From Macrostomum lignano (taxonomy: Eukaryota), in NCBI GenBank assembly GCA_002269645.1, contig NIVC01000991.1, forward strand, positions 248,001-312,000: 64,000 nt of DNA, written 5' to 3'. Numbering within the stretch: the first letter of the stretch is position 1; each line of letters begins with the position of its first letter. The notes under the pieces were generated by a model, which was given only the letters and a program-made list of their open reading frames with translations, had not been told where the DNA came from and ran no database searches. A program made the translations under genes and the position numbers. Shown here in pieces: positions 35,400 through 63,463 of the stretch.

Positions 35400-41794
<6,395 letters not shown>

Positions 41795-41995: not shown

Positions 41996-42411
41996 ATACA
42001 TTCAATTGCATGAGACATTGGGGGGGATTCCACCATAGATAAACAAACCCAGGGCACATTGTCAAATTTTACAGTGAACTATTTGCACCGCTTGAGATTG
42101 TAACGTTGTTTTGACTTATATTGTCCACAGGTCATCTACTTTTAACAAAGACCTATCTGAAGTTTTATTAGGGCCACATAGACTTCATGGTCCACTTGGC
42201 TCCACCACTAACTAACTTGTTGAATTATTTTCATTTTATTCTAACAAAATTGCACAATTTTTAATGTAGTTGCTTTTTGCGTTTTTGTAGTAAATTTGTG
42301 TTGCAGATGAGCTTTCTCTATTTTTTATTGATTTTTTAATCCAATGTGATCATCCCTCGTAGCCTTGGTAACCAACCATCCACGTCACTCCAGAATTTCA
42401 TCAAAATACAC

Positions 42412-43582
42412 CTTAAGAACCGCCCTCAAACCACCTGCAGAATCGCCCTCAAACCACCTGCAGAATCGCCCTCAAACCACCTGCAGAACCGCCCTCAAAC
42501 CACCTGCAGAATCGCCCTCAAACCCCTGCAGAACCGCTCTCAAACCACCTGCAGAATCGCCCTCAAACCACCTGCAGAATCGCCCTCAAACCACCTGCAG
42601 AATCGCCCTCAAACCACCTGCAGAACCGCCCTCAAACCACCTGCAGAATCGCCCTCAAACCACCTGCAGAATCGCCCTCAAACCACCTGCAGAATCGCCC
42701 TCAAACCACCTGCAGAATCGCCCTCAAACCACCTGCAGAATCGCCCTCAAACCACCTGCAGAATCGCCCTCAAACCACCTGCAGAATCGCCCTCAAACCA
42801 CCTGCAGAATCGCCCTCAAACCACCTGCAGAACCGCCCTCAAACCACCTGCAGAATCGCTCTCAAACCACCTGCAGAACCGCTCTCAAACCACCTGCAGA
42901 ACCGCCCTCAAACCACCTGCAGAACCGCTCTCAAACCACCTGCAGAACCGCCCTCAAACCACCTGCAGAACCGCTCTCAAACCACCTGCAGAACCGCCCT
43001 CAAACCACCTGCAGAACCGCCCTCAAACCACCTGCAGAACCGCCCTCAAACCACCTGCAGAATCGCCCTCAAACCACCTGCAGAACCGCCCTCAAACCAC
43101 CTGCAGAATCGCCCTCAAACCACCTGCAGAATCGCCCTCAAACCACCTGCAGAACCGCTCTCAAACCACCTGCAGAACCGCCCTCAAACCACCTGCAGAA
43201 TCGCCCTCAAACCACCTGCAAAATCGCCCTCAAACCACCTGCAGAATCGCCCTCAAACCACCTGCAGAATCGCCCTCAAACCACCTGCAGAATCGCCCTC
43301 AAACCACCTGCAGAACCGCCCTCAAACCACCTGCAGAATCGCTCTCAAACCACCTGCAGAACCGCTCTCAAACCACCTGCAGAACCGCCCTCAAACCACC
43401 TGCAGAACCGCTCTCAAACCACCTGCAGAACCGCCCTCAAACCACCTGCAGAACCGCTCTCAAACCACCTGCAGAACCGCCCTCAAACCACCTGCAGAAC
43501 CGCCCTCAAACCACCTGCAGAACCGCCCTCAAACCACCTGCAGAACCGCCCTCAAACCACCTGCAGAACCGCTCTCAAACCA
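42412..43582. repeat. 23-bp minisatellite (CGCCCTCAAACCACCTGCAGAAT)n, about 50 copies
   Basis: Period 23. Explains the two 430-aa ORFs. Confidence 0.95.
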
Positions 43583-44247
43583 CCTTCGATAAAAAAGTAT
43601 TTGGAATCGCATTATGCATGTTCTGTTATGTCTTATAACAATGTTATACTTTAAGTCTACATATGTTGCAAACTATTTTATATATATTGTATGAACAGTT
43701 TTTGCTATCTTAAGTTACGTAAAAGCGATAGAACCTTTCAAGTTACGTATAAATATTTCTTGCGTCATCACAAATTAGTCAGGTAATTAGAATTTAATTT
43801 AGCCTAAGTTCCATTGCTTGTCTTTTCTTTTCCTGCCCGCCGTAGACTATATCTCGATTCAGTCAGATTATTGTTATATTATTATACGGGAATAATTATA
43901 ACTAAGCAAATCTGGCTTGTAAATACTATAAAATAATAGCATATGCTGCTTATATTTCATACTTATAAATGCTTTTATTTTATTTAATGTTGTGCTGTTG
44001 ATAAGAGTAAAAATATTATGCTTAGCCTACTTGGCGCTTGACACTGAAGAATCGTGATAACATTTTTATCCTTTAATAAGATGAAAAATAATTAAAATAA
44101 AACAATTTTTATCGGATTTCAAACCTGCTTGATTGAGTGCGCAATTTCATATTGCGTGCGTTTATCATTATTATTAAATATCTAATTTGCTGTTTTCTTC
44201 TGTTATTTAAAATTGGTGTTATTGCACATTTAGTTAGTGGGAGTAAG

Positions 44248-44874: not shown

Positions 44875-47800
44875 TCAAAAGTCGGCAAACCAATTTTGAT
44901 TCTCAACGGCGTAAGTTTGATTAAAAAAGTTGCCCATATTGAAGTCGCTTTGGACCGCTTCAAAGAAGAAGTACATGTCGTTTGGACCGTCTAGGGCTGG
45001 CTGGTAGGCCACCTGAGCGAGGTGAAAATGGGAGAGTTTTTTCCTGATGTTTTTTGTGAATTTATTAAGCACCTGAATGTGACATTCAAATGAATGACAT
45101 TCTATTTGAAATGGTTCCTACGTACTCATTAGACAAACTAGTGACTTTCACCTTTTTAAAATTGCGCGTAATTATCTGCCAGACAGGTTAGTGACGTCAT
45201 CTACGAGCGCTCGTATTATCGATCGACTGTAAAGACACTCCTATCCGAAATTAGTGGCGTCGTCACTTGTTTAAACTGGTGCCTAAACACCTTGTCAGAC
45301 AGGATAGTGACGTCACCTGATTAAACTGGTGCCTAAACACCTTGTCAGACAGGTTAGTGACGTCACCTGTTTAAACTGGCGCCTAAAAAACCTGTCAGGC
45401 AGGTTAGTAACGTCACCTGATTAAACTGCTGGTGTCTAGACACCTGTCGGACAGATTTGTGACGTCACCTATTATCGATCGTCTTTAAATACACTCCCAC
45501 CTGAAATTTTTGACGTCACCTGTTTAAACTGGCGCCAAATTACCTGTCGAGCAGCTTAACAAAAATCTCACCTGAACAGTTCGATTCAACAGGCCGATAA
45601 AATCCACGTCTCTAAAGAACGGATGATGCCGAACTTCGTGCACTTTAGTTCGCAAATTACCCAACCGGAAGCTGGGATTCCGCATCAGCAGGCGTCGCAC
45701 CAGATCCACGCAGACGGCGTTGATCTCCGGCGGGAAGACGACCTCGAACTGCTTGGCCTCCGGGCATCTCTCGCGACGGTAGCACTCGGGCCCGATGCCA
45801 ACAAGCAGCTCGAAGATGATGACCCCCAGGCTGTACCAGTCAACGGCGAAGTTGTACGGCTTGCGCATGATTATCTCAGGTGCGATGTAGCCGATGGTGC
45901 CCACGGCTTTGGGATCCGTGATGAAGCAGCTCGCGTCCTGCAGCGCGTAGGAGATGCCCATGTCCGAGATTTTCAGCCAACCATTCTTGCCGACCAGGAT
46001 GTTCTTCGGCTTCAGGTCTCTGCGGGGGGGGGGGCAGCGGCACTGCGGAACTGTTCATTGTGTCTCTTGAGCTTTACTTGTGTCTGTTGAGCTATAATTG
46101 TGTCTCTTGAGCTTTACTTGTGTCTGTTGAGCTATAAATTTGTCTGTTGAGCTATAAATGTGTCTGTTGAGCTATAAATGTGTCTGTTGAGCTATAAATG
46201 TGTCTGTTGAGCTATAAATGTGTCTGTTGAGCTATAAATGTGTCTGTTGAGCTATAAATGTGTCTGTTGAGCTATAAATTTGTCTGTTGAGCTATAATTG
46301 TGTCTGTTGAGCTATAATTGTGTCTACTGAGCTATAATTGTGTCTGTTGAGCTATAATTGTGTCTGTTGAGCTTTACTTGTGTCTGTTGAGCTATAAATG
46401 TGTCTACTGAGCTATAATTGTGTCTGTTAAGCTATAATTGTGTCTGCTGAGCTATAATTGTGTCTGTTGAGCTATAATTGTGTCTGTTAAGCTATAATTG
46501 TGTCTGTTAAGCTATAATTGTGTCTGCTGAGCTATAATTGTGTCTACTGAGCTATAATTGTGTCTGTTGAGCTATAATTGTGTCTGCTGAGCTATAATTG
46601 TTTCTGTTGAGCTATAATTGTGTCTGTTGAGCTATAATTGTGTCTGTTGAGCTATAATTGTGTCTGTTAAGCTATAATTGTGTCTGCTGAGCTATAATTG
46701 TGTCTACTGAGCTATAATTGTGTCTGTTGAGCTATAATTGTGTCTGCTGAGCTATAATTGTTTCTGTTGAGCTATAATTGCGTCTGTTGAGCTATAATTG
46801 TGTCTGTTGAGCTATAATTGCGTCTACTGAGCTATAATTGTGTCTGTTGAGCTATAATTGTGTCTGCTGAGCTATAATTGTTTCTGTTGAGCTATAATTG
46901 CGTCTGTTGAGCTATAATTGTGTCTGTTGAGCTATAATTGCGTTTGTTGAGCTATGATTGTGTCTGTTGAGCTATAATTGTGTCTGTTGAGCTATAATTG
47001 CGTCTGTTGAGCTATAAATATGTCTATTAAGCTATCTAGCAATGTTTACATGAATCAGCATGTCAACAGTTTAGTGTATCTACTGCGTTACTTATATGTC
47101 TTCTATGGAGCTAATAAAATATTGTAATATATAAAATACCAAGGTTTTAATATATAAAATAGGATTTAGGATAGGGTTTAGATTAGGTTTATGTTAGGGT
47201 TGAGATTAGTTTTATGATCTAGGGCTTAACTTATCACCTATAGGGTTTAACTAGTTAAAACCCTATCATAAAACCAAACCTAAACCCTGACCTAAACCCT
47301 AACCTAAACCCTAACCTAAACTCTAATCTAAACCCTAACCTAAACTCTAACCTAAACCCTAACCTAAACCCTAACCTAAACCCTAACCTAAACTCTAACC
47401 TAAACCCTAACCTAAACCCTAACCTAAACTCTAACCCAAACCCTAACCTAAACGCTAACCTAAACGCTAATCTAAACCCTAACCTAAACCCTAACCTAAA
47501 CCCTATCCCAAACCCCGATGCCAGTAAAATAAAGCTCACCTGTGCACAATGTTCATCCGGTGCATGTATTCAATGCCCAGCACCAGCATAGCTGCCATAA
47601 ATTTCACCTCCTCGTAGCGAAACGTTTTCTTCAATCGCAGATGGTCGTGCAAGCAGCCGCACTCCATGAAATCGGTGACCACGTAGAGATTCTGGCTGCA
47701 CTGGAAGCTATCCACCAGCCTGATGATGAAGGGGTGATGCAGCACCGCCAGCATGTTCCGCTCCCTGATTATACTGTAGGCGCTGCAGGCGTTGTGCACC

Positions 47801-50764: not shown

Positions 50765-51790
50765 AATACCTGAAACTTCTACCCGTGAAGCACCTGAAAC
50801 TTCTACCCCTGAAGCACCTGAAACTTCTACCCCTGAAGCACCTGAAACTTCTACCCCTGAAGCACCTGAAACTTCTACCCCTGAATGGGTTGCTTTCACA
50901 AACGCGAAATTTCACAACCGCTAAATCACCTACTTTCATAACCGCGAAACTTCATAACCGCTAAAATATTGCAGTCACTTTCATAAGCGCGAAACTTCAC
51001 AACCGCAAGATTTCACAACCGCTAAATCACCTACTTTCACAACCGCAAAACTTCATAACCGCGAAACTTCACAACAGCTAAAAAGACTGTTGTATATGAA
51101 AGTAAGTGCAAAAAATTTAGTGGTTGTGAAGTTTCGCGTTTATGCAAAAAAATTAGCGGTTGTAAAGTTTCGCGTTTGGGAAGTTTCGCGTTTATGAAAG
51201 CAACTGCTTTTAGCGGTTTTGAAATTTCGAGTTTGTGAAACCGACCACCCTGAAGCACCTGAAACTTCTACCCCTGAAGCACCTGAACCTTCTACCCCTG
51301 AAACACCTGAAACTTCTACCCCTGAAGCACCTGAAACTTCTACCCCTGAAACACCTGAAACTTCTACCCCTGAAACACCTGAAACTTCTACCCCTGAAGC
51401 ACCTGAAACTTCTACCCCTGAAGCACCTGAAACTTCTACCCCTGAAGCACCTGAAACTTCTACCCCTGAAGCACCTGAACCTTCTACCCCTGAAACACCT
51501 GAAACTTCTACCCCTGAAGCACCTGAAACTTCTACCCCTGAAGCACCTGAAACTTCTACCCCTGAAACACCTGAAACTTCTACCCCTGAAGCACCTGAAA
51601 CTTCTACCCCTGAAGCACCTGAAACTTCTACCCCTGAAGCACCTGAAACTTCTACCCCTGAAGCACCTGAAACTTCTACCCCTGAAGCACCTGAAACTTC
51701 TACCCTTGAAACACTCGAAACTTCTACCCTTGAAACACCTGAAACTTCTACCCTTGAAACACCTGAAACTTCTACCCCTGAAACACTTGG
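50765..51790. repeat. 24-bp minisatellite (ACTTCTACCCCTGAAGCACCTGAA)n interrupted by a MITE
   Basis: Period 24 on both sides of 50886-51247. In the probable ABCA 5'UTR intron. Confidence 0.92.
50886..51247. mobile_element. MITE with about 40-bp imperfect TIRs and internal AACCGC/AACTTC subrepeats
   Basis: Left end TGGGTTGCTTTCACAAACGCGAAATTTCACAACCGCTAAA; reverse complement of right end TGGTCGGTTTCACAAACTCGAAATTTCAAAACCGCTAAA. CCCTGAA is duplicated on both flanks. Confidence 0.78.
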
Positions 51791-51891
51791 AAAAACTGAA
51801 ACTCCTCCCCCCCCCTGAAACTCCTAAAAGACCTTAAACACTGCTACAGACTACGCAAAACTATCGTAAACTTTCTTTCAGCCCGCCAATC

Positions 51892-54800
51892 ATGCTGGCA
51901 AAGCGGCAATTTCGTTACTTCCTTCGGATCTACTTTCTTCGTCTTAAGGGTGCAAAATTTCTTTGGCTCCTACCACTGATCGCCTGCCTCCTGTCCAACA
52001 ACTTCATCTACGTACCTTTGGCTCAGCTAATTGGATTCTATGGTAAAAAGTTTGTCGATATCAAGCAGGCGCACAATTTCGCGTCTGACAATGAAGTGCT
52101 AACGCAGACGGACCGGTACATTGGCGAAGTGGCTGCGATGGACGCGGTGCTTAGAGAGCTGGGCACCAGAAGCTCGGATCCTTCGCTTTTGTTCAAACAG
52201 TGCCAGAGCCCGGAGGATTGCAATGCTCAACATTTCAATCGATTGTACAGCAACAGCCCCGGCGGATACGTCAGCCAGGTTTGAGTTGCGGCAAAGTACA
52301 CTTGAGACATTTGTCCCGAAAGAACTGAGACCTATGTCCCGAAACACCTGAGACTTATGTCCCGAAACACCTGAGACTTATGTCCCGAAACACCTGAGAC
52401 TTTTGTTCTGAAACACCTGAGACTTTTGTCCCGAAACACCTGAGACTTTTATCCCGAAACACCTGAGACTTTTGTCCCAAAACACCTGAGACTTTTGTCC
52501 CGAAACACGTGAGACTTTTGTCCCGAAACACGTGAGACTTTTGTCCCGAAACACCTGAGACTTTTTGTCCCGAAACACGTGAGGCTTTTGTCCCGAAACA
52601 CGTGAGACTTTTGTCCCGAAACACCTGAGACTTTTTGTCCCGAAACACGTGAGGCTTTTGTCCCGAAACACGTGAGACTTTTGTCCCGAAACACCTGAGA
52701 CTTTTATCCCGAAACACCTGAGACTTTTGTCCCAAAACACCTGAGACTTTTGTCCCGAAACACGTGAGACTTTTGTCCCGAAACACGTGAGACTTTTGTC
52801 CCGAAACACCTGAGACTTTTTGTCCCGAAACACGTGAGGCTTTTGTCCCGAAACACGTGAGACTTTTGTCCCGAAACACCTGAGACTTTTTGTCCCGAAA
52901 CACGTGAGGCTTTTGTCCCGAAACACGTGAGACTTTTGTCCCGAAACACCTGAGACTTTTTGTCCCGAAACAACTGAGACTTTTATCCCGAAACACCTGA
53001 GACTTTTGTCTCGAAACACCTGAGACTTTTTGTCCCGAAACAACTGAGACTTTTATCCCGAAACACCTGAGACTTTTGTCCCGAAACACCTGAGACTTTT
53101 GTCCCGAAACACCTGAGACATTTTGTCCCGAAACACCTGAGGCTTTTGTCCCGAAACACCTGAGGCTTTTGTCCCGAAACACCTGAGACTTTTATCCCGA
53201 AACACCTGAGACTTTTATCCCGAAACATCTGAGACTTTAGCAGTGCCAGAAGAAAAAGTAACTGCAACTAATTTCTATAACTGCAGGTGGACTTCAAACC
53301 GAACGACCCACTTATTGTCTGTCTGCTGGAAACTGGAGCAGAGATCTACTGTCCCTTTCTTGGCTATCTGGCAAGCATTGGTCGGACAAAGGATCCTCAC
53401 ACTAAGCTGCGGTTTAAGGTTAGTCATAATTTATATATAGGCTCTTGTCTGTCTTTTGCTTCAGAACTGCACTCAGAGTTGCAACAGCTGCAATCAGAGT
53501 TGCAAAAGCTGCAATTAGATTTGCAAAAACTGCAATCAAAGCTTTAAAGCTACGGTACTGCATAGTTACAATATTCTTGCACTGATTTACGCGCAACCCA
53601 ATCGCAAAAATCAGGCCATTCGAATGTTCCGAGCTGTCGGGCAACATCAGCGCGACTCGCATCACTCCAGCAGCGAAGGCCGTACCATGTGCCATCTGGA
53701 AAGAAACTTTGCTGACATTCTGCCAGTACTAACGGCTGGTCAAAGCTTCTTATCAGTCGGAATGATGCACTTCTACTTTCTGGTGGCTACTCTGTCCTGC
53801 ATCTACGACTTGAAGGGCAATGGATTGTTACAGCTGCTGGTGCAGAAAGGCCTGTCTGTCCGGGCATATTGGCTAGTGATCTGCCTTGTCGCTGCTGTTG
53901 AGGTGAGATGCGCAACACTTACCAATTTATCCCAGCTGCATAGTGAATGGATGTTTATAGAGTTTAGATGACAATATACCTGATCTATGTGCGTTGAATG
54001 CTTTATAGTTCATCAAAACTTCAATTAGAATTTGCTCTTTAGGAAAGAAGTATCATAGCTGGTAGAAGCACGTGCGTGGTTTCTTTAATGCTTCACAGGA
54101 AATTGTTTGATTTATCCGTGGTTTACCCACAGATGTTATAAGTATACATGACAAATAGATAGATCACTAACTTTCTGTAAAGCAGGAACAACGGGAGGCC
54201 GTAGCCCAATGGTCCAATCAGAGCGGCGCTCTGAGTTGCCTGCAGCCCAGGCTCGATTCACATCAATTTGGTGGGCTAAATTGGAACCTCGGCTTGGCTC
54301 TGCTCGTTCAATTACCGGCCTTGAAGGCCAACCCCCAAGGCACAGTGAAGTGTACATGCCTAACGATGAATATAGTTAGGGCCGCTGTACACTCCTGTGC
54401 GAGTGTGTGCCTGCGCGTATGACTGCGTACGTATCCGCAGAGAATCCACAGACAATGTAGAGTCGATAAGCTGTTAACGTATCTGCGTTGGTGGCACCTA
54501 AAATTGCGCAGACCTGTCTCCAATGCACCAACAGGTCCTGTTCGGCGCCACCGTATTCACTGTGTCCCTGGCCGCCCAGTGCCCGAACTTCTACCAGAGC
54601 GCGGCTCTCGCCAAAGTGTTCGGCCACTGTGCGCTGCAGTTCCTGTGCATTGCCGCAGCCTGCCTGCTGGTTTCTGTTACAGTTGGCCGCTACGGCAAGG
54701 CCGGCCTGGCCTTGGGGCTCATAGCTGTGCTCGGCATGATCATCAATCTGATCAACAGTGTGTTGCTGAGTGATCAGAAGGCGGCCAGGACTGCCCTGCT

Positions 54801-57800
54801 GCTGCTCCATCCGCCCGGACAGCTGGGCGATGTTGTTCAGGTGAGTCTGATAGGTGGTTAGACAGTTGGCAGTTAAGGTCGGGCGGACACTGGGGCAGTC
54901 AGGTCCAGCGACAGACAGTACGAAAGACACTTGGACAGATGCAAAGATAGCCCACAAGGCTTACACTAAGACACTAAAAGACGCTAATATAGACATTAAA
55001 ACAGACACTAAGACAGGCACTAAGACAGGCACTAAGACAGACACTAAGACAGGCACTAAGACAGGCACTCAGACAGGCACTAAGACAGACACTAAGACAG
55101 GCACTAAGACAGGCACTCAGACAGGCACTAAGACGGGCACTAAGACAGGCACTAAGACAGACACTAAGACAGGCACTAAGACAGGCACTAAGACGGGCAC
55201 TAAGACAGGCACTAAGACAGGCACTAAGACAGACACTAAGACTGACACTAAGACAGGCACTAAGACAGGCACTAAGACAGGCACTCAGACAGGCACTAAG
55301 ACAGACACTAAGACAGGCACTAAGACAGACACTAAGACAGACACTAAGACAGGCACTAAGACAGGCACTAAGACAGGCACTAAGACGGGCACTAAGACAG
55401 GCACTAAGACAGGCACTAAGACAGGCACTAAGACAGACACTAAGACTGACACTAAGACAGGCACTAAGACAGGCACTAAGACAGGCACTAAGACAGGCAC
55501 TAAGGCATTCACAGAAATGCACTTACAGACAAATCAGAAGCAGAATATCACAAGCATCATTCCCTGCTCCGCACTTCAGACCATCCTGCTCACAGACTCC
55601 AGCAAGGTGCCTCCAGCTGGGTATGCCACGCTGGCATTCGCCTCGCCAGCCATTCACACGATCTGCTACATCTGCCTGGCACTCTACTTGGACTTCGTGC
55701 TGGCCTCGGGCAACGGCCTGTGCCTGTCAGCCGGTTACATCCTCCAATCCGATTTCTGGTGTCGTTCAAAAAGCGACGGATCTTTGGGCGAAGTGCCGGA
55801 GTTGACAACTCCACTAGCCAATATTGAGCCAATTAAGGAAGACCTGAGGCCTGTGGTCACAATGTCTAACATGTCTAAATCGCTACCAACTGGTTGCTAC
55901 GGTATAAATCATCGAGAGAACGAGGAGAGAAACCTGATACTCGACAATATTTCCGGTAATGCGAGTTTGTACGCTTCAGTGGCTAAAGGGAAATAATTAG
56001 TAAATTGGACTAGCAATTCAAACCCCCTCTGGGAGAGCGCCCGATATAGAGAACGCAGTAGAGTTCGACTTACTTATGATAACCAATAGAACCTCAGTAT
56101 AAATAAGCTAGTGCGAAAACTTTATTGTTACCAGGGGCGTCGCCATGGATTTTATGGTGGGGGACAAAGCCAAGAATTGTACATGAATCGGTGTTGTCAG
56201 CAATTATTTTGGCGTCACAGGCACTCATTTTAGCGCCGCAGCAGGCACTCATTTTTGCCCCGCAGCAGGCACTCATTTTAGCGCCGCAGCAGGCACTCAT
56301 TTTAGCGCCGCAGCAGGCACTCATTTTAGCGCCGCAGGCCCCATTTTGTTGCCGCAGGCGCTATTTTTTTTTAGGGGGGCTGTAGCCCAGCGGTAGCGCA
56401 GCTGCTCTGGTGTGCCGTGACCCAGGCTCGATTCCAAGTGCAGCCACATTAATTTGGGGCTGAATTGGAATTTCGGCTTGGCTCGCTTGTGCAATTAACG
56501 GCCTTGAGAGCCAACCCCCCAAGGCGCAGTGAAGTGTACATGCCTAACAATAAATAAAGTTAGGGCCGCTGTACACTCCTGTGTGAGTGTGTGCCTGCGT
56601 AACGTATCCGCGCGCTTGTATGCCTGCTCAGGGGAGTCGGCGGAATGGGCAGTAATGCCTCTCGCCGGTTTGTGTGCCAATGACGCTTAAATTGCGCCAG
56701 GGTGCACACAACCCCCCTGCCTCTAATAAAAAGGCACTCATTTTAGCGCCGCAGCAGGTACTCATTTTAGCGCCGCAGCAGGCACTCATTTTAGCGCCGC
56801 AGCAGGCACTCATTTTAGCGCCGCAGCAGGTACTCATTTTAGCGCCGCAGCAGGCACTCATTTTAGCGCCGCAGCAGGTACTCATTTTAGCGCCGCAGCA
56901 GGTACTCATTTTAGCGCCGCAGCAGGTACTCATTTTTGCGCCGCAGGCCCCATTTTGTTGCCGCAGGCGCTATGTTTTGTCGCCCTGAAACAAAATTATT
57001 GATTTTCGTAACAGGTCAACAAAGGTGGTGCTGAGGGGACAAAGCATTGGCATGTCCCCCACTGGGGAACATGTCCCCCCTGCCCCCCCCCTCGCTGGCG
57101 AAATAGTTATTCCTCTCAATTAGGTTAGTAGCTACGAGGATCTCTTACTAATATAAAATTTTATTAGTATCCTAAAATTTCCAGATTAATCTATTCTACA
57201 AAATGAAATCAATTCAGGTAAATGTTAACAAATTAATAAATTAACAATGGGTTCATGTGCCATTTGTTTGAAATTTACAAACAACAAGCGTATGTAATCG
57301 AATGACGTACACATATTTGTAGTTCATCAGCAAAATACATACTTTAAGCAACACTAGCTGGCATAATTGTAACAGTTTCTACAAAGGCTGTTGATGCTAC
57401 ATGCTTGAAATGCTGAAAACACTGACATTCTGGGATGGATTTTCTTTCAAAGGGTCCGATTTGAACTCCGTAACGTTTATTTGCTTTGTCCGTGTAGTCT
57501 TTTCCGTATCTCGCTCCTGCTTGCTCGTTATTGACGCCCTGGCTTTGGTCCTGCCGAACGAGGCAATATCGAATACTAGTTCGAATATTTCGCACAATGT
57601 CAATAGCGACATTCCCAAGTAGATACCCATGATGCCGCCAATATCCGAGATGAACTCTTGCACTCCGTAGTCTATAGAGAAATTCAACCGATCGCACAAT
57701 ATTCGACGCGGCTTGAAGTGTATCTTGATCACATTGTTGCGAATGTACTCCGCGGCTGTTGATTGGTTTGCAGACACTAGCAGGTCCAGTGCAGGTACGC

Positions 57801-60800
57801 TTTGGTTCCTGCTGCGGGCCTGTTGCCAGGCCTGCGCGATGCTGCTGCGGATGAACGGAGCCATGGAGCTCTGGGTGGGCCAGTCGGAACCGGAGACGCT
57901 AACCGAGTATTCCAAAGTACTGCACGGCCGTTTGGACTGACAAGCAGACTTTGTGAGCCGGTCAAACTGGCTGCTTTTGTTTACTAACAGTTGGTCGCGA
58001 AAGAATACAAAGAAAGTTGAATCTCCGGTGAGATTCATGACGAACTTTTTTCCTCTCAGAGGCCACGGCAGCGGACCGACATTGCCGGACATGTTGACCA
58101 AGTCCTGCGTCTGCTTGTGAAACTCGTAATAGAAGCAGTAGGAGTAGCTGTATGAGTGATTGTAAGGAGTCTGGTCGTACGTGTTCACGTACTGAACGCT
58201 GGGCACCTCATCCAGACAGTTAAACTGACCACTCTTGTACACCTGCTGGGTCATGTCGATCTCGACAGTGTGAAACTTGCCAGGTCCAAGCGAGAACGAG
58301 CTGACAAAATCGGACGGATATTCGCCTGGTGGCGTGAGGAAGACTCGAACCCCAGCCCGCCGGTCCGGCCCATTGTAGTCCGCAACGTTGAGCGACCAAT
58401 CCGACACAGGGATTTGAGTCCGCCTGGCGAACACCGTCTGCAGGATGTCATTGCCGCTGGTTGCCAGGCCATCGAAGGCCGAATCTGTCACCAGCGTGAC
58501 TACAATACCAGACGAAGAACCAGTTTGCACTATTTTACTCTGCCATGTGCTGTTTAGAGCCCACTTTAAACAGCGCAGGTACATCGGATGGTAGAAGGTC
58601 TCCGCTTCGATAGGTCTATACTCGGGCATGCCGTAGTCCGTATTGTACGTCACGTCGCTAGTGATGATGTTCTGCTCGTTCCGGTGCGCCAGCGCGTCAA
58701 CCAACAGCCGGTAGGGCAGCGACTGCGGATAGGCCATCGAGAAGTCCATCTCAAAAATTTCAGCGGCGCGACCGGTGATGCCAATGGTTGCCAGTTCGCG
58801 TTGCATGATCAGTCGCGATGCATTTAACAGATTGTTGATCTGGGCGGCTTCGGCTGCTCCAACGTTGGCTGAGTAACTGCCGGAGATCGGGTTCTCGTAG
58901 CAGGCGTACACGTCCGGGAACCGGAAGTTCAAACTGTTGCCCTCGAGGCTGCTGGTGATTTGCCTAGCCTGCAACTTGACGACTAAATCGTAGAATCCTT
59001 TGAGAAACAATCCCGCCATGGCGAGGAACACGGACAGCCAGGCCAGTCGGACAGTCAATGGTTTGTTGCTAACCATCCTTGGCAGTCCGTGCGACGTTGT
59101 GGACGCCATCGCCTCCTTGAGTTGCAGCATTATTTGGCAGTTTTTTGGTAGGAAAAATATACCTTAGCAACTATTTTTGCTTTATTCTTTCGCTGAAGTT
59201 TGCTTTTATCCTTACTGAGGCCACTCTGGCTAATTGAGTGCCGGAACAATGCACACACCACTGCTCAACGCGGAGTGATTTATTAGCTAGACTAAGCTAG
59301 CCGGCGGAAAAGTGCGACGAACAGCTTACGTAGACTGCAATTGGACTTTATACTGAAAGCTTAAAATAAGCATATTTTGCGCTCTATTTCTGCCTAACTG
59401 ATTGTTTCAATGCAGCAATGTCAATACATTTTAGGCTCGAAGGTATTGTGTAAACTTTGCCCACTGCACAGCTCTCAGGGCAGTCAGACAGTTCGGGTAC
59501 CTCAGAGTCCCTGTATTTTATTAAGCACATAATTTCCGATTTATTGTATAAACAGTTCCGGGAGCGACCGTTTGTCTAATCAGAGATTACATTTTATAGG
59601 CGTCTGGATTAGAAACCCGTTTTGGTTTTGCAATTGTAAAGTAGAAAGACAAATTGGACAGTGACCAATCCAGGCGCAATTGTAAGTAGTCCCTGGTGTA
59701 AAAAAGTTACCATGACGGCGCGGGATGTTGGTAAAAACATTAGCGCGTTTTTCCAGCTGGAGCAGAGAATGGGAAGGGCCAGGCTGCACTGCCTGATTGT
59801 CCTGCTTTGTACTTTTATTGTAAAATAGCCAATCGGAATCCAGATACATCTGGATGTAGAAACTGCTAAAAACTCAAGTTGAAGTACCAAATGTACTTCC
59901 AAGTTTCTGCTGACAGTAAGACAGACACTAAGACAATTTTGCTCTAAGTAACTTTAAAATTCACATTAGCTCGTAACACACCCTCTTCTGCAGTGACAAT
60001 CTACGAGAGCCAGATCACGGCAATCATCGGGCACAACGGTGCCGGCAAGTCCACCCTATTGAAGATCATTTCCGGCGAAGAACGGCCAACCAGCGGCTGG
60101 GTGTGCATCGACGGCTGGCACACGGACAGCTCGGTGACTCCGCTGCGTCTTCGCGGCCAGCTTGGCATCTGTTCGCAGCGGAACTGCCTTAGCAATAGTT
60201 TGACAGTGCGGCAAACTATCGATCTCACTTTGATTAGCTGCGGCATGTACCCGGATCAGGAGACTGAAGAGCTCGACGATATACTCGAACTGCTGAGGCT
60301 GCGAGTCAAGCTGATGAGCTCCGTAGGGACGCTGAGTGGCGGACAGAAACGAAAGCTGAGCATAGCGCTGGCTCTGCTCGGCAATCCCAGAGTTGTCATC
60401 TTGGACGAGCCGACAAACGGTGTTGATCCAGTTTCTAGGCGTCGGATTTGGAAACTGCTGCAGGAACGGAAACACGGATGCGCCATCCTACTCAGCACTC
60501 AGTTCATGGACGAGGCGGACACCTTAGCAGATCGTAAGATTCTGCTATCAGCCGGCTCGATCATTTGCTGTGGCTCGTCGCTATTTCTAAAAAACGTATT
60601 CGACAGCGGATTCATATTCGAGGTGTCCGTCAAGTCGCCGGAGCTGATCCCGACGTTATTGAAGCGCATCGCCGACGAGTTTCGCACGATTCGTTTGAAG
60701 AAACAATTTCGAAATAATCTGGAGCTGCAGGTGTCCGCTAACGAGCTCGAATTGTTGCCAACATTTGCCGCGTTTTTAGAAAAGCGAGTCGACTTGATAG

Positions 60801-63323
60801 CAGCTTACGGATTGGCCCAACCAACTCTGGCAGACATTTTTATCCGACTGAAAGACTTCGATCCGAAACAGATTTTGAAACTGTTCGAAACTAAAACTGT
60901 TAGCCTGTTGGCCAGCGAAACTAATCAAGCTGAGAGTCTCAGCAGCATTGTCAACCAGCCGAAAGGAAACGCGCTGGACACTCTGGAAGCAAGAGTTCTA
61001 GCGCCGTCTGTTACTAAACGGTTCAACGCCATACTAACTATTAATATACGTCGAATCTATCGTACGAGAGCAAAGCTCTGCCTTCGCCTGATAGTGCCCG
61101 TCCTGCTGCTGGTCTGTGTGGCCGCTGCCGCTATAGTCGAGAGCGTCACGCGCAATCGGAATCAGCAGAGCCGACGGGTGCTGCACTACCGAAACATGCA
61201 GTTCAACAAAGGCGTGTGCGTGTTCGACTCACCGAGCTCTAAGTGAGCATCCCAAGGGTGACGGGCGACACACTTTCAAGACGTAGAAATCCAAGTTTTA
61301 AAAGAAATAGATCGCTACCCAGATCATGTTACTTAATAGTACAGTCACGGGGCGGGATAGCTCAGTGGTAACACCTCTGACCATCGCACAGTCATGTTAG
61401 TTTGGCGCTTGTCACGCGGTCCACCCCCGAGAGTGTGCCCCCTCTGTCGATGAGACTTCACAGCAGCCTACGGCTTGGCCCAACCAACTCTAACTGACAT
61501 TTTGATTCGCCTGAAAGACGTTGACCAAAAGAAGGTTGCGAAACTGTTCGAAACTAATACCTGTTAGTCTGTCAGCTTGTTAGGCTCTTTGGGGGTTGCA
61601 ATTATGCCTGTGGTACGCATCCGTGTGCATGTGCAAGACTGCCTCTCCTTGCTGACTGTGGGTCAACTATAGTCTTGATTGCGGCGGCAGTGCCTAAAAC
61701 GTTCCCTATAGTCTCTTAAAAGGCGTCAAAATTACGATCGATGTCTTGCCCAACTATACCTAGAGGTCGAATTTCAATTGCAGAAACAAAAAGGAGCCGA
61801 CGGCTGATGACTGCGCAAAATTATTCAACGCCAAGTCTAGCTCGGGATTCAAGGTGCTGTCCAAAGTTCAGGTGACTGGCATCGACGGTTTTCTAGAACA
61901 GGATGACGTCATCGATATGATGAAGCAATATTGCGACGGCTCAACAGAAGAGAAGGTGTGCCCAGTGTTTCACACGGATGTCTGGAGCACGTCGGTACCA
62001 AATGCAAAGCGCGAGGCAAGCATTGGCCTGTACAGTGTATCACCCATCTATAACAGCACCGTTATAGCGGCCACCATCATGAGTGCCTACTCAAGCGTCA
62101 TGAACTACTTTGCTGGCAGCAGCGGAGGCAGTAAAGCTCAAATACGCGTTGAAGCTGTGGATGATTTCAAGAAAACTTTTTTGCCTCTATTTGGAGCTTT
62201 TGTTCAGATCATAATCTTGTCCGTGCTGCCGGCCACTTTCATGGAAGACACCGTCGAAGACAAAGAGGCTTGCGTTCGTTCGCAACTGAGTTCCATTGGT
62301 GTCTCTTCGGCTCATTATTGGGCAACCACCTTTGTGGTGCATTGGATTCAGTACGCCATTATTTATATTGTCAGTGTCATCCTGTTAGTCAGCATTCTTC
62401 CGCACAACTTTCTAAACCTGTTCTACACGACTGGCGTCTTCATTCCGACTCTATTTTTTGGCCTGACAAACAATCTACTATTCTCATACATTGTCAGCTC
62501 ATTCCTGTCGAACATTCAGCAGTTTGCTAGGATCAGCTGTCTATTCTTCTCCCTATGCGTCAGTGCGTCACTGCTAGCTGTCCAGCTCAACAGCGTCGCC
62601 GGCATGATAATGATCTACCTGCTGCCGCCATTCGCTTCTGTAGCCTTGACTTTCTACGGCACTAAAGTGTACTACTTCACCAATGCCTACTATTGGATTG
62701 ATGGCGAACAAGCTGCTCCGGAAGGTAGTTCAATCTACTTTGCGCACATGCACGTGTACAACAGCTTGATTGCCATGGTTTGTCACACCGGCCTGCTCGT
62801 CATACTACTCGTGGCATCCGAGAATCGTCACCTGGCGCTACACCGTTGCCAGAACCTCTGCCAGCGCTCCGACGAGACCTCCTATCCGCAGGGCGAAGAT
62901 CCGGGCGTCGATGAAGAGATTCAACGCATCGAGGAGCACCGTCATAATCAGGCGAACCTGTTGGAGGTGCGGCACATTGGCAAGACCTATCATCCCGGCC
63001 GAGTCAAAGCCGTTCGCGACGTCACTTTCGGCGTGACGCGAGGCGAAATATTCGGCCTGCTGGGTCCGAACGGTGCCGGGAAGACCACCACAATGTCCGT
63101 GATAGTTGGCGATCAGAAACCCAGTCGGGGTGAATGCGAAATTCGTGCCGGTGAGCAATGGCTGAAAAGTTGCAGCGCCGCACGCCTTGGCGCCATTGGC
63201 TACTGTCCGCAGCACAACCCCCTGTTCCCCTGCATCACGGTGGCCGAACATCTGTTCTTCTACGCCAAAATCCTTGGAGTTCACGAAGGCCTAGCCGAGA
63301 AGGACGTTCGCACCCTACTTCAG
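51892..63323 (+). CDS. ABCA-subfamily full transporter (ABCA5/6/8/9/10-like), 3' partial; exons 51892-52278, 53287-53418, 53615-53902, 54535-54840, 55580-55955, 59994-61242, 61784-63323, continuing past the window
   Basis: TMD1 with GLLQLLVQKGLSVRAYWL and LALYLDFVL. NBD1 GHNGAGKST, LSGGQKRKL, ILDEPT, STQFMDEAD. TMD2, then NBD2 GPNGAGKTT and GYCPQ. All junctions phase-matched (0,0,0,0,1,2); 1426 codons so far. The exon 3 acceptor is the least certain. Confidence 0.88.
52300..53238. repeat. 23-bp minisatellite (ACACCTGAGACTTTTGTCCCGAA)n
   Basis: Fills ABCA intron 1. Confidence 0.95.
54193..54490 (+). mobile_element. tRNA-derived SINE, subfamily B (different 3' tail)
   Basis: A box TAGCCCAATGG, GGCTCGATTC, shared core to GTGTGTGCCTGCG, then unrelated tail. 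In ABCA intron 3. Confidence 0.8.
54985..55503. repeat. 12-bp minisatellite (AGACAGGCACTA)n
   Basis: Fills ABCA intron 4. Confidence 0.95.
56132..57101. mobile_element. Non-autonomous DNA-transposon-like element carrying a 24-bp minisatellite (GCACTCATTTTAGCGCCGCAGCAG)n
   Basis: Starts CAGGGGCGTCGCCA. The right end retains only TGGCGA (partial inverted match) after GGGGACA/TGTCCCC subterminal motifs. Confidence 0.5.
56374..56732 (+). mobile_element. tRNA-derived SINE, full length, subfamily A
   Basis: GGGGGGCTGTAGCCCAGCGG (A box), GGCTCGATTCC (B box), tail TAATAAAAA; near-identical to 2571-2929. Confidence 0.88.
57397..59130 (-). CDS. DEG/ENaC (amiloride-sensitive sodium channel family) subunit, intronless, 577 aa, nested in ABCA intron 5
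   Basis: N-terminal TSHGL (HG motif), TM1, FP motif, GVRVFL...LGPG, RPC, and TM2 ISDIGGIMGIYLGMSLLTLCE. AATAAA on the minus strand at 57165-57160. Confidence 0.9.
   Translation of the reverse strand: MLQLKEAMASTTSHGLPRMVSNKPLTVRLAWLSVFLAMAGLFLKGFYDLVVKLQARQITSSLEGNSLNFRFPDVYACYENPISGSYSANVGAAEAAQINNLLNASRLIMQRELATIGITGRAAEIFEMDFSMAYPQSLPYRLLVDALAHRNEQNIITSDVTYNTDYGMPEYRPIEAETFYHPMYLRCLKWALNSTWQSKIVQTGSSSGIVVTLVTDSAFDGLATSGNDILQTVFARRTQIPVSDWSLNVADYNGPDRRAGVRVFLTPPGEYPSDFVSSFSLGPGKFHTVEIDMTQQVYKSGQFNCLDEVPSVQYVNTYDQTPYNHSYSYSYCFYYEFHKQTQDLVNMSGNVGPLPWPLRGKKFVMNLTGDSTFFVFFRDQLLVNKSSQFDRLTKSACQSKRPCSTLEYSVSVSGSDWPTQSSMAPFIRSSIAQAWQQARSRNQSVPALDLLVSANQSTAAEYIRNNVIKIHFKPRRILCDRLNFSIDYGVQEFISDIGGIMGIYLGMSLLTLCEIFELVFDIASFGRTKARASITSKQERDTEKTTRTKQINVTEFKSDPLKENPSQNVSVFSISSM
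61462..61576 (+). pseudogene. Frameshifted ABCA coding fragment inside ABCA intron 6
   Basis: AAYGLAQPTLTDILIRLKDVDQKKVAKLFETN versus exon 6 AAYGLAQPTLADIFIRLKDFDPKQILKLFETK (60799-60916); followed by a +1 insertion and a stop. Confidence 0.75.
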
Positions 63324-63463
63324 GTAATTTTAGATTTGTCTTCCTGCATTAGCTCAAACAGAGTAGAAATAGCAGCAGCGTATTCTGTCTAGTAAAGCAC
63401 GGTTAATCCGGCCTCGAGAGTGTTGCTATTGTTGTATAATTGTATAATTGTGTTGTATAATTG

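What the first reader, a model, noticed from the sequence alone, without database searches (positions are those of the whole stretch)
55956..59993. Intronless DEG/ENaC channel nested antisense in an intron that splits ABCA NBD1
Seen: ABCA exon 5 ends LDNIS-G|GTAATG and exon 6 starts CAG|TG-ACA-ATC, giving LDNISVTIYESQ just before Walker A. The 4038-bp intron contains the whole intact 577-codon channel gene with its own polyA signal. Known: animal DEG/ENaC genes are usually multi-exon. Inference: a retroposed or intron-stripped channel living inside a lipid transporter gene, with possible transcriptional interference or mutually exclusive expression.
Basis: partly seen in the sequence, partly recalled or inferred. 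Interest (0 to 1): 0.72.

Follow-up and report, generated by a model that had tools for sequence, protein, structure and literature searches.

The report
Sodium-channel gene nested in ABCA intron
A complete, apparently working DEG/ENaC sodium-channel gene sits backwards inside one intron of an ABCA lipid-transporter gene in a Macrostomum-type flatworm genome; this is an ordinary nested gene, and having no introns is normal for its local gene family, not a sign of retrocopying.

Summary
A GT..AG intron of 4038 bp (55956-59993) splits the first nucleotide-binding domain of an ABCA transporter. The spliced peptide aligns without a gap across the junction to human ABCA3 and ABCA4. Inside it, on the minus strand, is an uninterrupted 577-codon ORF (57397-59130). 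It matches Pfam ASC over its full length (E 3e-40), has the family motifs, and gives a confident model that matches FaNaC, ASIC and ENaC.

All close relatives are Macrostomum lignano proteins, the best at 71% identity. Four M. lignano paralogues have 0, 1, 1 and 2 short introns, so a CDS without introns is within the clade's normal range. No poly(A) tract or target-site duplication marks a retrocopy.

A drift simulation indicates the ORF has been kept open by selection. Nested genes on the opposite strand are common in animals. Whether the arrangement is old, and whether the two genes interfere, could not be tested: no RNA data or orthologous locus was reachable.

Verdict: real and correctly described, but ordinary. 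It is a new member of known kinds. Interest is low.

The parts
55580..55955 (+). ABCA exon upstream of the intron. It covers the end of TMD1 and the first beta-strand of NBD1 and ends ...LILDNIS + G. The 5' boundary (AG at 55578-55579) is inferred.
   Evidence: The reading frame is open, and the peptide aligns to ABCA3 482-573 and ABCA4 847-944. The donor G|GTAATG was read directly.
55956..59993 (+). Phase-1 GT..AG intron of the ABCA gene, 4038 bp, the largest seen in this gene within the window.
   Evidence: Donor GTAATG; acceptor CCCTCTTCTGCAG with a polypyrimidine tract. Homology runs ungapped across the junction. The other introns in this gene look to be about 0.5-1.3 kb, judged from ORF gaps.
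59994..61243 (+). ABCA exon downstream of the intron. It carries the rest of NBD1 (Walker A GHNGAGKST, signature LSGGQKRKLS, Walker B VVILDEPT), the regulatory domain and the start of TMD2. The 3' boundary was not determined.
   Evidence: Pfam ABC_tran E 3e-32; ABCA3, ABCA4, ABCA1 and ABCA7 at E 1e-75 to 1e-89.
57397..59130 (-). Uninterrupted 577-codon CDS of a DEG/ENaC channel subunit.
   Evidence: - Pfam ASC E 3e-40, full length.
- 71% identical to M. lignano A0A1I8GD92.
- Motifs HG (14-15), FPDVYAC (71-77) and TM2 GGIMGIYLGMSLLTLCE are present.
- AlphaFold model pLDDT 79.8, and Foldseek E 1e-22 to FaNaC/ASIC/ENaC.
57160..57165 (-). AATAAA hexamer 231 nt after the channel's stop codon, a candidate poly(A) signal. 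No A-tract follows it.
   Evidence: It is the only AATAAA or ATTAAA in the 497 nt after the stop. The flank is 29% GC, so the hexamer alone is weak evidence.
59131..59993 (-). 863-bp spacer between the channel's ATG and the ABCA acceptor. It is the presumed 5' UTR and promoter of the channel (inferred) and also holds the host intron's branch site and polypyrimidine tract.
   Evidence: In-frame stops lie upstream of the ATG. TATAAA occurs at -222 and -468, which is not significant. No Pfam or Rfam hit.
56375..56732 (.). Copy of an interspersed repeat, lying downstream of the channel's 3' end inside the intron.
   Evidence: Other copies lie at 2574-2929 (96.6%), 54259-54415 (88.6%) and 38310-38473, and in M. 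lignano contig NIVC01002341 at 82-90%. It is not a tRNA and has no Rfam hit.
56206..56367 (.). 24-bp minisatellite array flanking the interspersed repeat.
   Evidence: TRF result; the repeat finder family D1.
56732..56968 (.). Second 24-bp minisatellite array, 9 copies at 96% match, 95% identical to the first array over 152 nt.

Best explanation
The window comes from a Macrostomum-type free-living flatworm genome. A full-length ABCA transporter gene (TMD1-NBD1-TMD2-NBD2, plus strand, from about 51.9 kb to beyond the window end) has a 4-kb phase-1 intron just before Walker A of NBD1.

That intron holds, on the opposite strand, a complete and selectively maintained gene for a DEG/ENaC channel subunit. 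The predicted protein has two transmembrane helices and a large ectodomain, and by family analogy it would form a trimeric sodium-permeable channel.

Inferred: the channel is transcribed from its own promoter in the 863 bp between its ATG and the host's acceptor, and it ends at or near the AATAAA 231 nt after its stop. The host pre-mRNA simply splices the intron out.

The channel belongs to a Macrostomum-specific expansion of divergent DEG/ENaC genes that are intron-poor as a group, with 0-2 short introns. Its CDS without introns therefore reflects the clade's normal state or the loss of one or two short introns. A recent retroposition is not needed. The extra length of the intron is explained by the gene (1.73 kb of CDS plus flanks) and about 1 kb of interspersed repeat and minisatellite.
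For: Shown:
- Splice junction and ungapped ABCA homology across it.
- Four-domain ABCA architecture.
- Channel ORF, Pfam ASC full length.
- Family motifs, with invariant G498, G499, G502, G506, S508 and E514 in TM2.
- Confident model, with all top fold matches to FaNaC, ASIC or ENaC.
- The nearest relatives that carry a source name are all M. lignano.
- A repeat family is shared with an M. lignano contig.
- Paralogue gene structures have 0-2 short introns, at least three distinct positions among them. One position is shared by P0123 and P0125 and is absent from P0124 and the window gene.
- No A-tract or target-site duplication.
- Under unconstrained substitution to the observed divergence, 0 of 300 simulated ORFs stay open; 4 of 300 do at half that divergence.
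- Identity to P0001 is uneven: TM1 and TM2 83%, core ectodomain 80-82%, C-tail 40%.
- CDS GC is 0.52 against flanks of 0.29 and 0.41.

Background:
- Macrostomum genes average 3-5 introns of 0.56-1.4 kb and exons of 0.72-0.86 kb (PMC5730564, PMC10468722).
- Intronic genes make up about 6% of Drosophila genes (PMC3786989).
Against: - There is no transcript evidence for either gene. Exact-sequence look-ups of the channel and of P0001 found no contig.
- The transcription start, the UTRs and the use of the AATAAA are inferred.
- The species is not identified.
- No close Macrostomum ABCA relative turned up, so the host gene's orthology and the age of the nesting are unknown.
- The gene structure of the closest relative, P0001, is unknown.
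- The ectodomain has only 6 cysteines, against 14 in ASIC1 (from my own knowledge), so channel properties may depart from those of characterised members.
- Three M. lignano DEG/ENaCs of another branch gave no peptide-evoked current in oocytes (PMC9234716).
Confidence: 0.8

Rival explanations
1. Processed retrogene: an mRNA of a multi-exon DEG/ENaC parent was reverse-transcribed and inserted into the ABCA intron, then acquired a promoter there.
For: The CDS has no intron. It sits alone, with no other DEG/ENaC sequence anywhere in the 64-kb window. None of four paralogue loci lies near an ABCA gene, so the location is derived. LTR retrotransposons, a source of reverse transcriptase, make up 21% of the M. 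lignano genome (PMC5730564).
Against: There is no poly(A) tract after the poly(A) signal and no flanking direct repeats. The clade's other members have only 0-2 short introns and one is also intronless, so lacking introns does not discriminate. The nearest known relative is only 71% identical, so any such event would be old and its hallmarks erased. That leaves the idea hard to exclude but without positive support.
Confidence: 0.12
2. The channel ORF is a silent or recently inactivated copy. It is intact by sequence but not expressed, for example because it is silenced by host-gene transcription running through it.
For: No transcript evidence could be obtained. No significant promoter motif was found. 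The NCBI annotation of M. lignano lacks even the 71% relative, which is known only from UniProt.
Against: The ORF is open over 577 codons despite 29% protein divergence from its nearest relative: 0 of 300 neutral simulations stay open. Conservation is concentrated in the transmembrane helices and the core ectodomain. All family motifs are intact.
Confidence: 0.05
3. The two ABCA parts are separate transcription units, or an assembly join, and the channel lies between two genes, not inside one.
For: No junction reads are available. The intron is about 3-7 times the genus's mean intron length (PMC5730564, PMC10468722).
Against: The upstream exon ends in the middle of NBD1's first beta-strand region, and the downstream exon begins 9 residues before Walker A. 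Neither piece would be a complete domain alone. Canonical GT/AG sites in a compatible phase restore an ungapped alignment to ABCA3 and ABCA4. A repeat family occurs on both sides of the intron and within it, which fits one contiguous genome region.
Confidence: 0.03

Closest known systems
DEG/ENaC superfamily (Pfam PF00858 ASC). Nearest solved members are the FMRFamide-gated channels FaNaC (7yvb, 8on7-8ona), then ASIC1, ASIC5 and ENaC.
   Same: Full-length ASIC-type architecture: a short N-terminus with HG, TM1, the post-TM1 FPxxxxC motif, a large ectodomain, TM2 with the GxS filter (GMS) and a conserved Glu, and a short C-tail. The fold matches at E 1e-22, TM-score 0.5-0.63.
   Different: Only 14-18% identical to the solved members. 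It has 6 ectodomain cysteines, against 14 in ASIC1 (the ASIC1 figure is from my own knowledge). The helices at 420-466, where a thumb-like region would be expected (my own reading of the model, not tested), carry no cysteines. The gating stimulus is unknown.
Macrostomum lignano DEG/ENaC paralogues: A0A1I8GD92 (P0001), PAA48052 (P0122), PAA81733 (P0123), PAA90405 (P0124), PAA58710 (P0125).
   Same: They form the same lineage-specific clade and align from end to end. Gene structure is intron-poor throughout, and P0124 is also a single-exon CDS.
   Different: Identity is 71% to P0001 and only 25-39% to the others. None of the four loci examined lies in or near an ABCA gene within 10 kb either side. 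The P0122 annotation is truncated at its N-terminus.
Nested (intronic) protein-coding genes of animals, for example Drosophila 2mit in an intron of timeless2 (PMC3786989) and mammalian host/nested pairs (PMC11694760).
   Same: A whole protein-coding gene lies inside one intron of a larger host gene, in the opposite orientation and with a function unrelated to the host's.
   Different: There is nothing distinctive in the arrangement itself. Here the host intron interrupts a catalytic domain, but this has no consequence once the intron is spliced out.
ABCA full transporters (ABCA3, ABCA4, ABCA1, ABCA7).
   Same: TMD-NBD-regulatory domain-TMD-NBD order. ABCA proteins are the best matches by more than 50 orders of magnitude in E-value over other ABC subfamilies.
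   Different: The NBD1 H-loop histidine is replaced by Gln (LSTQFMDEAD, against THHMDEAD or THFMDEAD in ABCA4 and ABCA3). The N-terminal ectodomain looks short and gave no PDB or Pfam match.

Membership tests
DEG/ENaC (PF00858 ASC) | Full-length match to the family profile above the curated cut-off | tested here: met
   139.1 bits against a cut-off of 23.6, E 3e-40, profile positions 3-455 of 455, residues 9-518.
DEG/ENaC (PF00858 ASC) | Two transmembrane helices flanking a large ectodomain, with short cytoplasmic ends | tested here: met
   The AlphaFold model has helices 25-54 and 490-535 with a mixed beta/alpha ectodomain between them. pLDDT is 79.8 and pTM 0.74.
DEG/ENaC (PF00858 ASC) | N-terminal HG motif and post-TM1 FPxxxxC motif | tested here: met
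   TTSHGLPR (H14, G15; G15 is conserved in at least 90% of 15 relatives). FRFPDVYAC, with F69, P72 and C77 nearly invariant.
DEG/ENaC (PF00858 ASC) | TM2 signature with the G/S-x-S selectivity filter and a conserved Glu | tested here: met
   DIGGIMGIYLGMSLLTLCEIFEL. G498, G499, G502, G506, S508 and E514 are invariant in the alignment. The segment aligns to TM2 of FaNaC and ASIC.
DEG/ENaC (PF00858 ASC) | Fold similarity to solved ASIC, ENaC or FaNaC subunits | tested here: met
   All top 50 Foldseek hits are FaNaC, ASIC or ENaC chains. Best is 7yvb at E 1.2e-22, TM-score 0.53/0.63.
DEG/ENaC (PF00858 ASC) | Conserved set of ectodomain disulfide cysteines (14 in ASIC1; figure from my own knowledge) | tested here: inconclusive
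   There are only 8 Cys in all, 6 of them in the ectodomain: 77, 187, 305, 332, 397, 403, with 479 near TM2 and 513 in TM2. Five are invariant within the Macrostomum-centred alignment. The reduced set is shared by the clade, so it is a clade trait and not decay.
DEG/ENaC (PF00858 ASC) | Trimeric, amiloride-sensitive, sodium-selective current | not testable with these tools
   This needs heterologous expression and electrophysiology.
ABCA full transporter | NBD with Walker A, Q-loop, signature and Walker B, and ABCA proteins as the best matches | tested here: met
   GHNGAGKST, CSQ, LSGGQKRKLS and VVILDEPT are present. ABCA3 and ABCA4 score E 5e-89, against 8e-33 for the best non-ABCA protein. 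The H-loop His is Gln.
ABCA full transporter | TMD1-NBD1-(R1)-TMD2-NBD2 on one polypeptide | tested here: met
   The concatenated plus-strand exons align to ABCA4 867-1179, 1704-2069 and 2078-2269, and to ABCA3 482-861. Pfam finds ABC2_membrane_3 plus ABC_tran in the 61854-63392 ORF. The gene runs off the window within NBD2.
Nested (intronic) gene | The entire transcription unit lies inside one intron of a host gene whose flanking exons are joined in one mRNA | tested here: inconclusive
   The CDS and candidate poly(A) signal lie well inside the intron, 1441 bp from the donor and 863 bp from the acceptor. Continuity of the host exons is supported by homology. Transcript ends and junction reads are not available.
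Processed retrogene | Remnant poly(A) tract at the 3' end | tested here: not met
   No A-run follows the AATAAA at 57165-57160. The sequence runs into unique and G-rich DNA.
Processed retrogene | Target-site duplications flanking the insert | tested here: not met
   No direct repeat brackets the gene. The only bracketing repeat is a 17-nt inverted pair at 88%, about what chance gives in 4 kb by my own estimate.
Processed retrogene | An intron-containing parental gene whose introns are precisely missing | tested here: inconclusive
   Paralogues have 0-2 short introns, which map to window residues 288, 363 and 460. These paralogues are only 25-39% identical. The structure of the 71% relative could not be obtained.

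The most novel reading that the evidence does not exclude
The nesting is conserved across Macrostomum species and has a function. Antisense transcription of the channel through the ABCA intron, or host transcription through the channel's promoter, would make the two genes mutually exclusive between cell types. Alternatively, the Macrostomum-specific, cysteine-poor and intron-poor DEG/ENaC clade arose from one ancient retrocopy that then multiplied and colonised new sites, introns included.
Probability: 0.08. Interest if true: 0.4.

Novelty: new member of a known kind. Interest (0 to 1): 0.15.

Why it matters
The finding has little weight on its own. It adds one unannotated member to a flatworm-specific DEG/ENaC expansion and one more example of a gene nested on the opposite strand.

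Its practical value is for annotation:
- Nested single-exon genes like this one, and its 71% relative in M. lignano, appear to be missing from the GenBank gene set.
- At least one paralogue model (PAA48052) is truncated at its N-terminus.

The clade's divergent, cysteine-poor ectodomain and unknown ligand may interest people who are identifying the ligands of invertebrate DEG/ENaC channels.

Tried and rejected
1. Exact-sequence look-up of the channel and of P0001 in public assemblies, to obtain transcripts or the orthologous locus. Neither is on record.

2. Search for a Macrostomum ABCA orthologue, to test synteny:
   - the NBD1 exon found only distant ABC and ABCA proteins;
   - a 585-aa query without the NBD found nothing.

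3. tRNA-derived SINE idea for 56385-56460. ARAGORN found no tRNA in the window and Rfam found nothing in 55500-60300. The element is nonetheless a genuine interspersed repeat.

4. Transposon carriage of the channel gene. No terminal inverted or direct repeats beyond chance.

5. Other genes in the intron. The remaining ORFs (58156-58557 plus strand; 59580-59902 minus strand; minisatellite ORFs) have no family match.

6. A second DEG/ENaC copy or parent within the window. None found.

7. A link between the neighbouring NEDD4-like gene and the channel. The channel's C-tail has no PPxY motif, so I treat the neighbourhood as coincidence.


Full report
**Observation**

- The plus-strand frame that ends ...NLILDNIS runs into G|GTAATG at 55955/55956. 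The frame resumes after CCCTCTTCTGCAG| at 59993/59994.
- The intron is phase 1 and 4038 bp long. Splicing gives LDNIS-V-TIYESQITAIIGHNGAGKST.
- The spliced 401-residue stretch aligns to human ABCA3 (residues 482-860, E 5e-89) and ABCA4 (847-1158, E 9e-89). No gap falls at the junction, and the best non-ABCA protein reaches only E 8e-33.
- Concatenated plus-strand exons from 51.9 kb to the window end cover TMD1, NBD1, the regulatory domain, TMD2 and the start of NBD2. The host is therefore one full ABCA transporter gene that runs off the window.
- The upstream exon carries the first strand region of NBD1 and the downstream exon carries the rest. Neither half is a viable unit alone.

**The nested gene**

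- On the minus strand, 57397..59130 is an ORF of 577 codons. In-frame stops lie upstream of its ATG.
- From local base composition, an open frame of this length has a probability of about 2e-13.
- It matches Pfam ASC (PF00858) over the whole profile at E 3e-40.
- It carries the HG motif, the post-TM1 FPDVYAC motif and the TM2 signature GGIMGIYLGMSLLTLCE, with a G-M-S filter.
- An AlphaFold model built on 15 relatives has mean pLDDT 79.8. Its top 50 PDB matches are all FaNaC, ASIC or ENaC chains; the best is E 1.2e-22 with TM-score up to 0.63.
- Membership of the DEG/ENaC superfamily is therefore secure.
- One AATAAA lies 231 nt after the stop, at 57165-57160 on the minus strand. The flank is 29% GC, so a single hexamer is near the chance expectation and is only a candidate signal.

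**Origin of the window**

- The best relative is Macrostomum lignano A0A1I8GD92 (P0001) at 71% identity over 98% of the length. Every next-best relative that carries a source name is also from M. lignano, at 39% and then 25-30%.
- A 358-bp interspersed repeat inside the intron (56375-56732) has other copies in the window at 79-97% identity. It also has a copy at 82-90% in an M. lignano contig.
- The density of mini- and microsatellites fits what is reported for M. lignano (PMC5730564).
- I conclude that the window is from M. lignano or a congener. I could not decide which one.

**Is it a retrocopy?**

I fetched the loci of four M. lignano paralogues and rebuilt their exon structures.

| Paralogue | Introns in CDS | Intron length | Position in window residues |
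|---|---|---|---|
| P0124 | 0 | - | - |
| P0122 | 1 | 77 nt | 288 |
| P0125 | 1 | 88 nt | 460 |
| P0123 | 2 | 73 nt and about 616 nt | 363 and 460 |

- The position-460 intron is shared by P0123 and P0125. It is absent from P0124 and from the window gene.
- The clade is therefore intron-poor as a whole, with occasional loss or gain of short introns. A CDS with no introns lies within its normal range.
- The general rule that animal DEG/ENaC genes have many exons holds for vertebrate ASIC and ENaC genes (my own knowledge). It does not apply to this lineage.
- Positive hallmarks of retroposition are absent. No A-tract follows the poly(A) signal, and no direct repeats bracket the gene. The only bracketing repeat is a 17-nt imperfect inverted pair, about what chance gives in 4 kb by my own estimate.
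- An ancient retroposition, for example at the base of the clade, cannot be excluded. Nothing here calls for it.

**Is the gene alive?**

- There is no RNA evidence. Exact look-ups found no contig.
- Indirect evidence favours function.
  - I applied unconstrained substitutions to the ORF until protein identity fell to the observed 71%. On average 8 stops appeared, and 0 of 300 replicates stayed open. At 85% identity, 4 of 300 stayed open. Indels were ignored, which makes the test conservative.
  - Identity to P0001 is 83% in both transmembrane helices and 80-82% in the core ectodomain, but 40% in the C-tail. The few indel columns (six gaps in P0001, one in the window protein) fall in or near the C-terminal tail.
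  - The CDS is 52% GC, between flanks of 29% and 41%.

**Contents of the intron**

| Interval | Content |
|---|---|
| 55956 to about 56120 | unique sequence |
| 56206-56367 | 24-bp minisatellite array |
| 56375-56732 | interspersed repeat |
| 56732-56968 | second 24-bp minisatellite array |
| to 57396 | AT-rich 3' flank of the channel |
| 57397-59130 | channel CDS |
| 59131-59993 | 863-bp spacer up to the acceptor |

No tRNA, no Rfam family and no other protein family is present.

Mean intron length in the genus is 0.56-1.4 kb (PMC5730564, PMC10468722). The other introns of this ABCA gene appear to be 0.5-1.3 kb. The 4-kb size is thus accounted for by the nested gene plus about 1 kb of repeats.

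**Mechanism**

- Shown: the anatomy, the family assignments and the integrity of both genes.
- Inferred: the channel is transcribed from its own promoter in the 863-bp spacer and is polyadenylated near 57140. The host removes the whole unit by ordinary splicing.
- Speculation: transcriptional interference or mutually exclusive expression. Both are known for some host/nested pairs (PMC3192792, PMC11694760) but were not tested here.

**Comparison and novelty**

- Nested genes are common in animals. They are about 6% of Drosophila genes, and most of these encode proteins (PMC3786989). That such genes often lie on the opposite strand is my own knowledge.
- The channel is a new, apparently unannotated member of a known superfamily, within a flatworm-specific clade.
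- None of the four paralogue loci lies near an ABCA gene. The location is therefore derived, but I could not date it. The orthologous M. lignano locus was unreachable, and two searches for a Macrostomum ABCA relative found none.

**Verdict**

The feature is real but ordinary, so I score interest at 0.15.

Noticed in passing
window 61454-61572 and 60791-60908: A 119-nt fragment in the next ABCA intron is 81% identical to part of the preceding exon. It encodes ...AAYGLAQPTLTDILIRLKD... against ...AAYGLAQPTLADIFIRLKD... This is a small duplicated exon piece, presumably a dead remnant.
   Followed up: partly
window about 60550-60580 (NBD1 H-loop, peptide LLSTQFMDEAD): The switch histidine of the NBD1 H-loop is Gln here. 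ABCA3 and ABCA4 have His at the aligned position. This may mean a degenerate or slow first ATP site. NBD2 could not be compared because the window ends within it.
   Followed up: no
window 57397-59130 (-), protein residues 55-489: The channel's ectodomain has only 6 cysteines. The helices at 420-466, where a thumb-like region would be expected (my own reading of the model), carry none. The reduced set is shared with the Macrostomum paralogues. The clade may stabilise its ectodomain differently from ASIC and ENaC.
   Followed up: partly
L002 9770-10000 (M. lignano NIVC01004250, gene for PAA48052 / P0122): The annotated 489-aa protein lacks its N-terminus, including TM1. The window channel aligns in frame from L002 9770, so the real ORF starts at least 230 nt upstream of the annotated start.
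   Followed up: partly
window 56375-56732; also 2574-2929, 54259-54415, 38310-38473: An interspersed repeat of about 360 bp has at least four copies in the window (79-97% identity) and a relative in M. lignano contig NIVC01002341. Here it is flanked by 24-bp minisatellite arrays. It is not a tRNA and has no Rfam match.
   Followed up: partly
window 36887-40704 (+): A NEDD4-like E3 ubiquitin ligase gene (several WW domains and a HECT domain) lies about 11 kb upstream of the ABCA gene. NEDD4-2 regulates vertebrate ENaC through PPxY motifs (my own knowledge). This channel's C-tail has no PPxY, so I treat the neighbourhood as coincidence.
   Followed up: partly
window 45524-45961 (-): An exon encoding the C-terminal lobe of a protein kinase domain (Pfam Pkinase, E 2e-14), from an unrelated minus-strand gene between the ligase and ABCA genes.
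   Followed up: no
window 54997-55504, 36448-36864, 39548-40213, 42346-43654, 51219-51837, 52355-53182: Long, very regular mini- and microsatellite arrays fill many introns and spacers. One example is a 12-bp unit repeated 42 times at 54997-55504 in the ABCA intron just upstream. They create long spurious ORFs on both strands.
   Followed up: no
UniProt A0A1I8GD92 (P0001): The closest relative of the channel is named 'Acid phosphatase' in UniRef, although its only precomputed Pfam domain is ASC (PF00858). The name looks like an annotation error.
   Followed up: no
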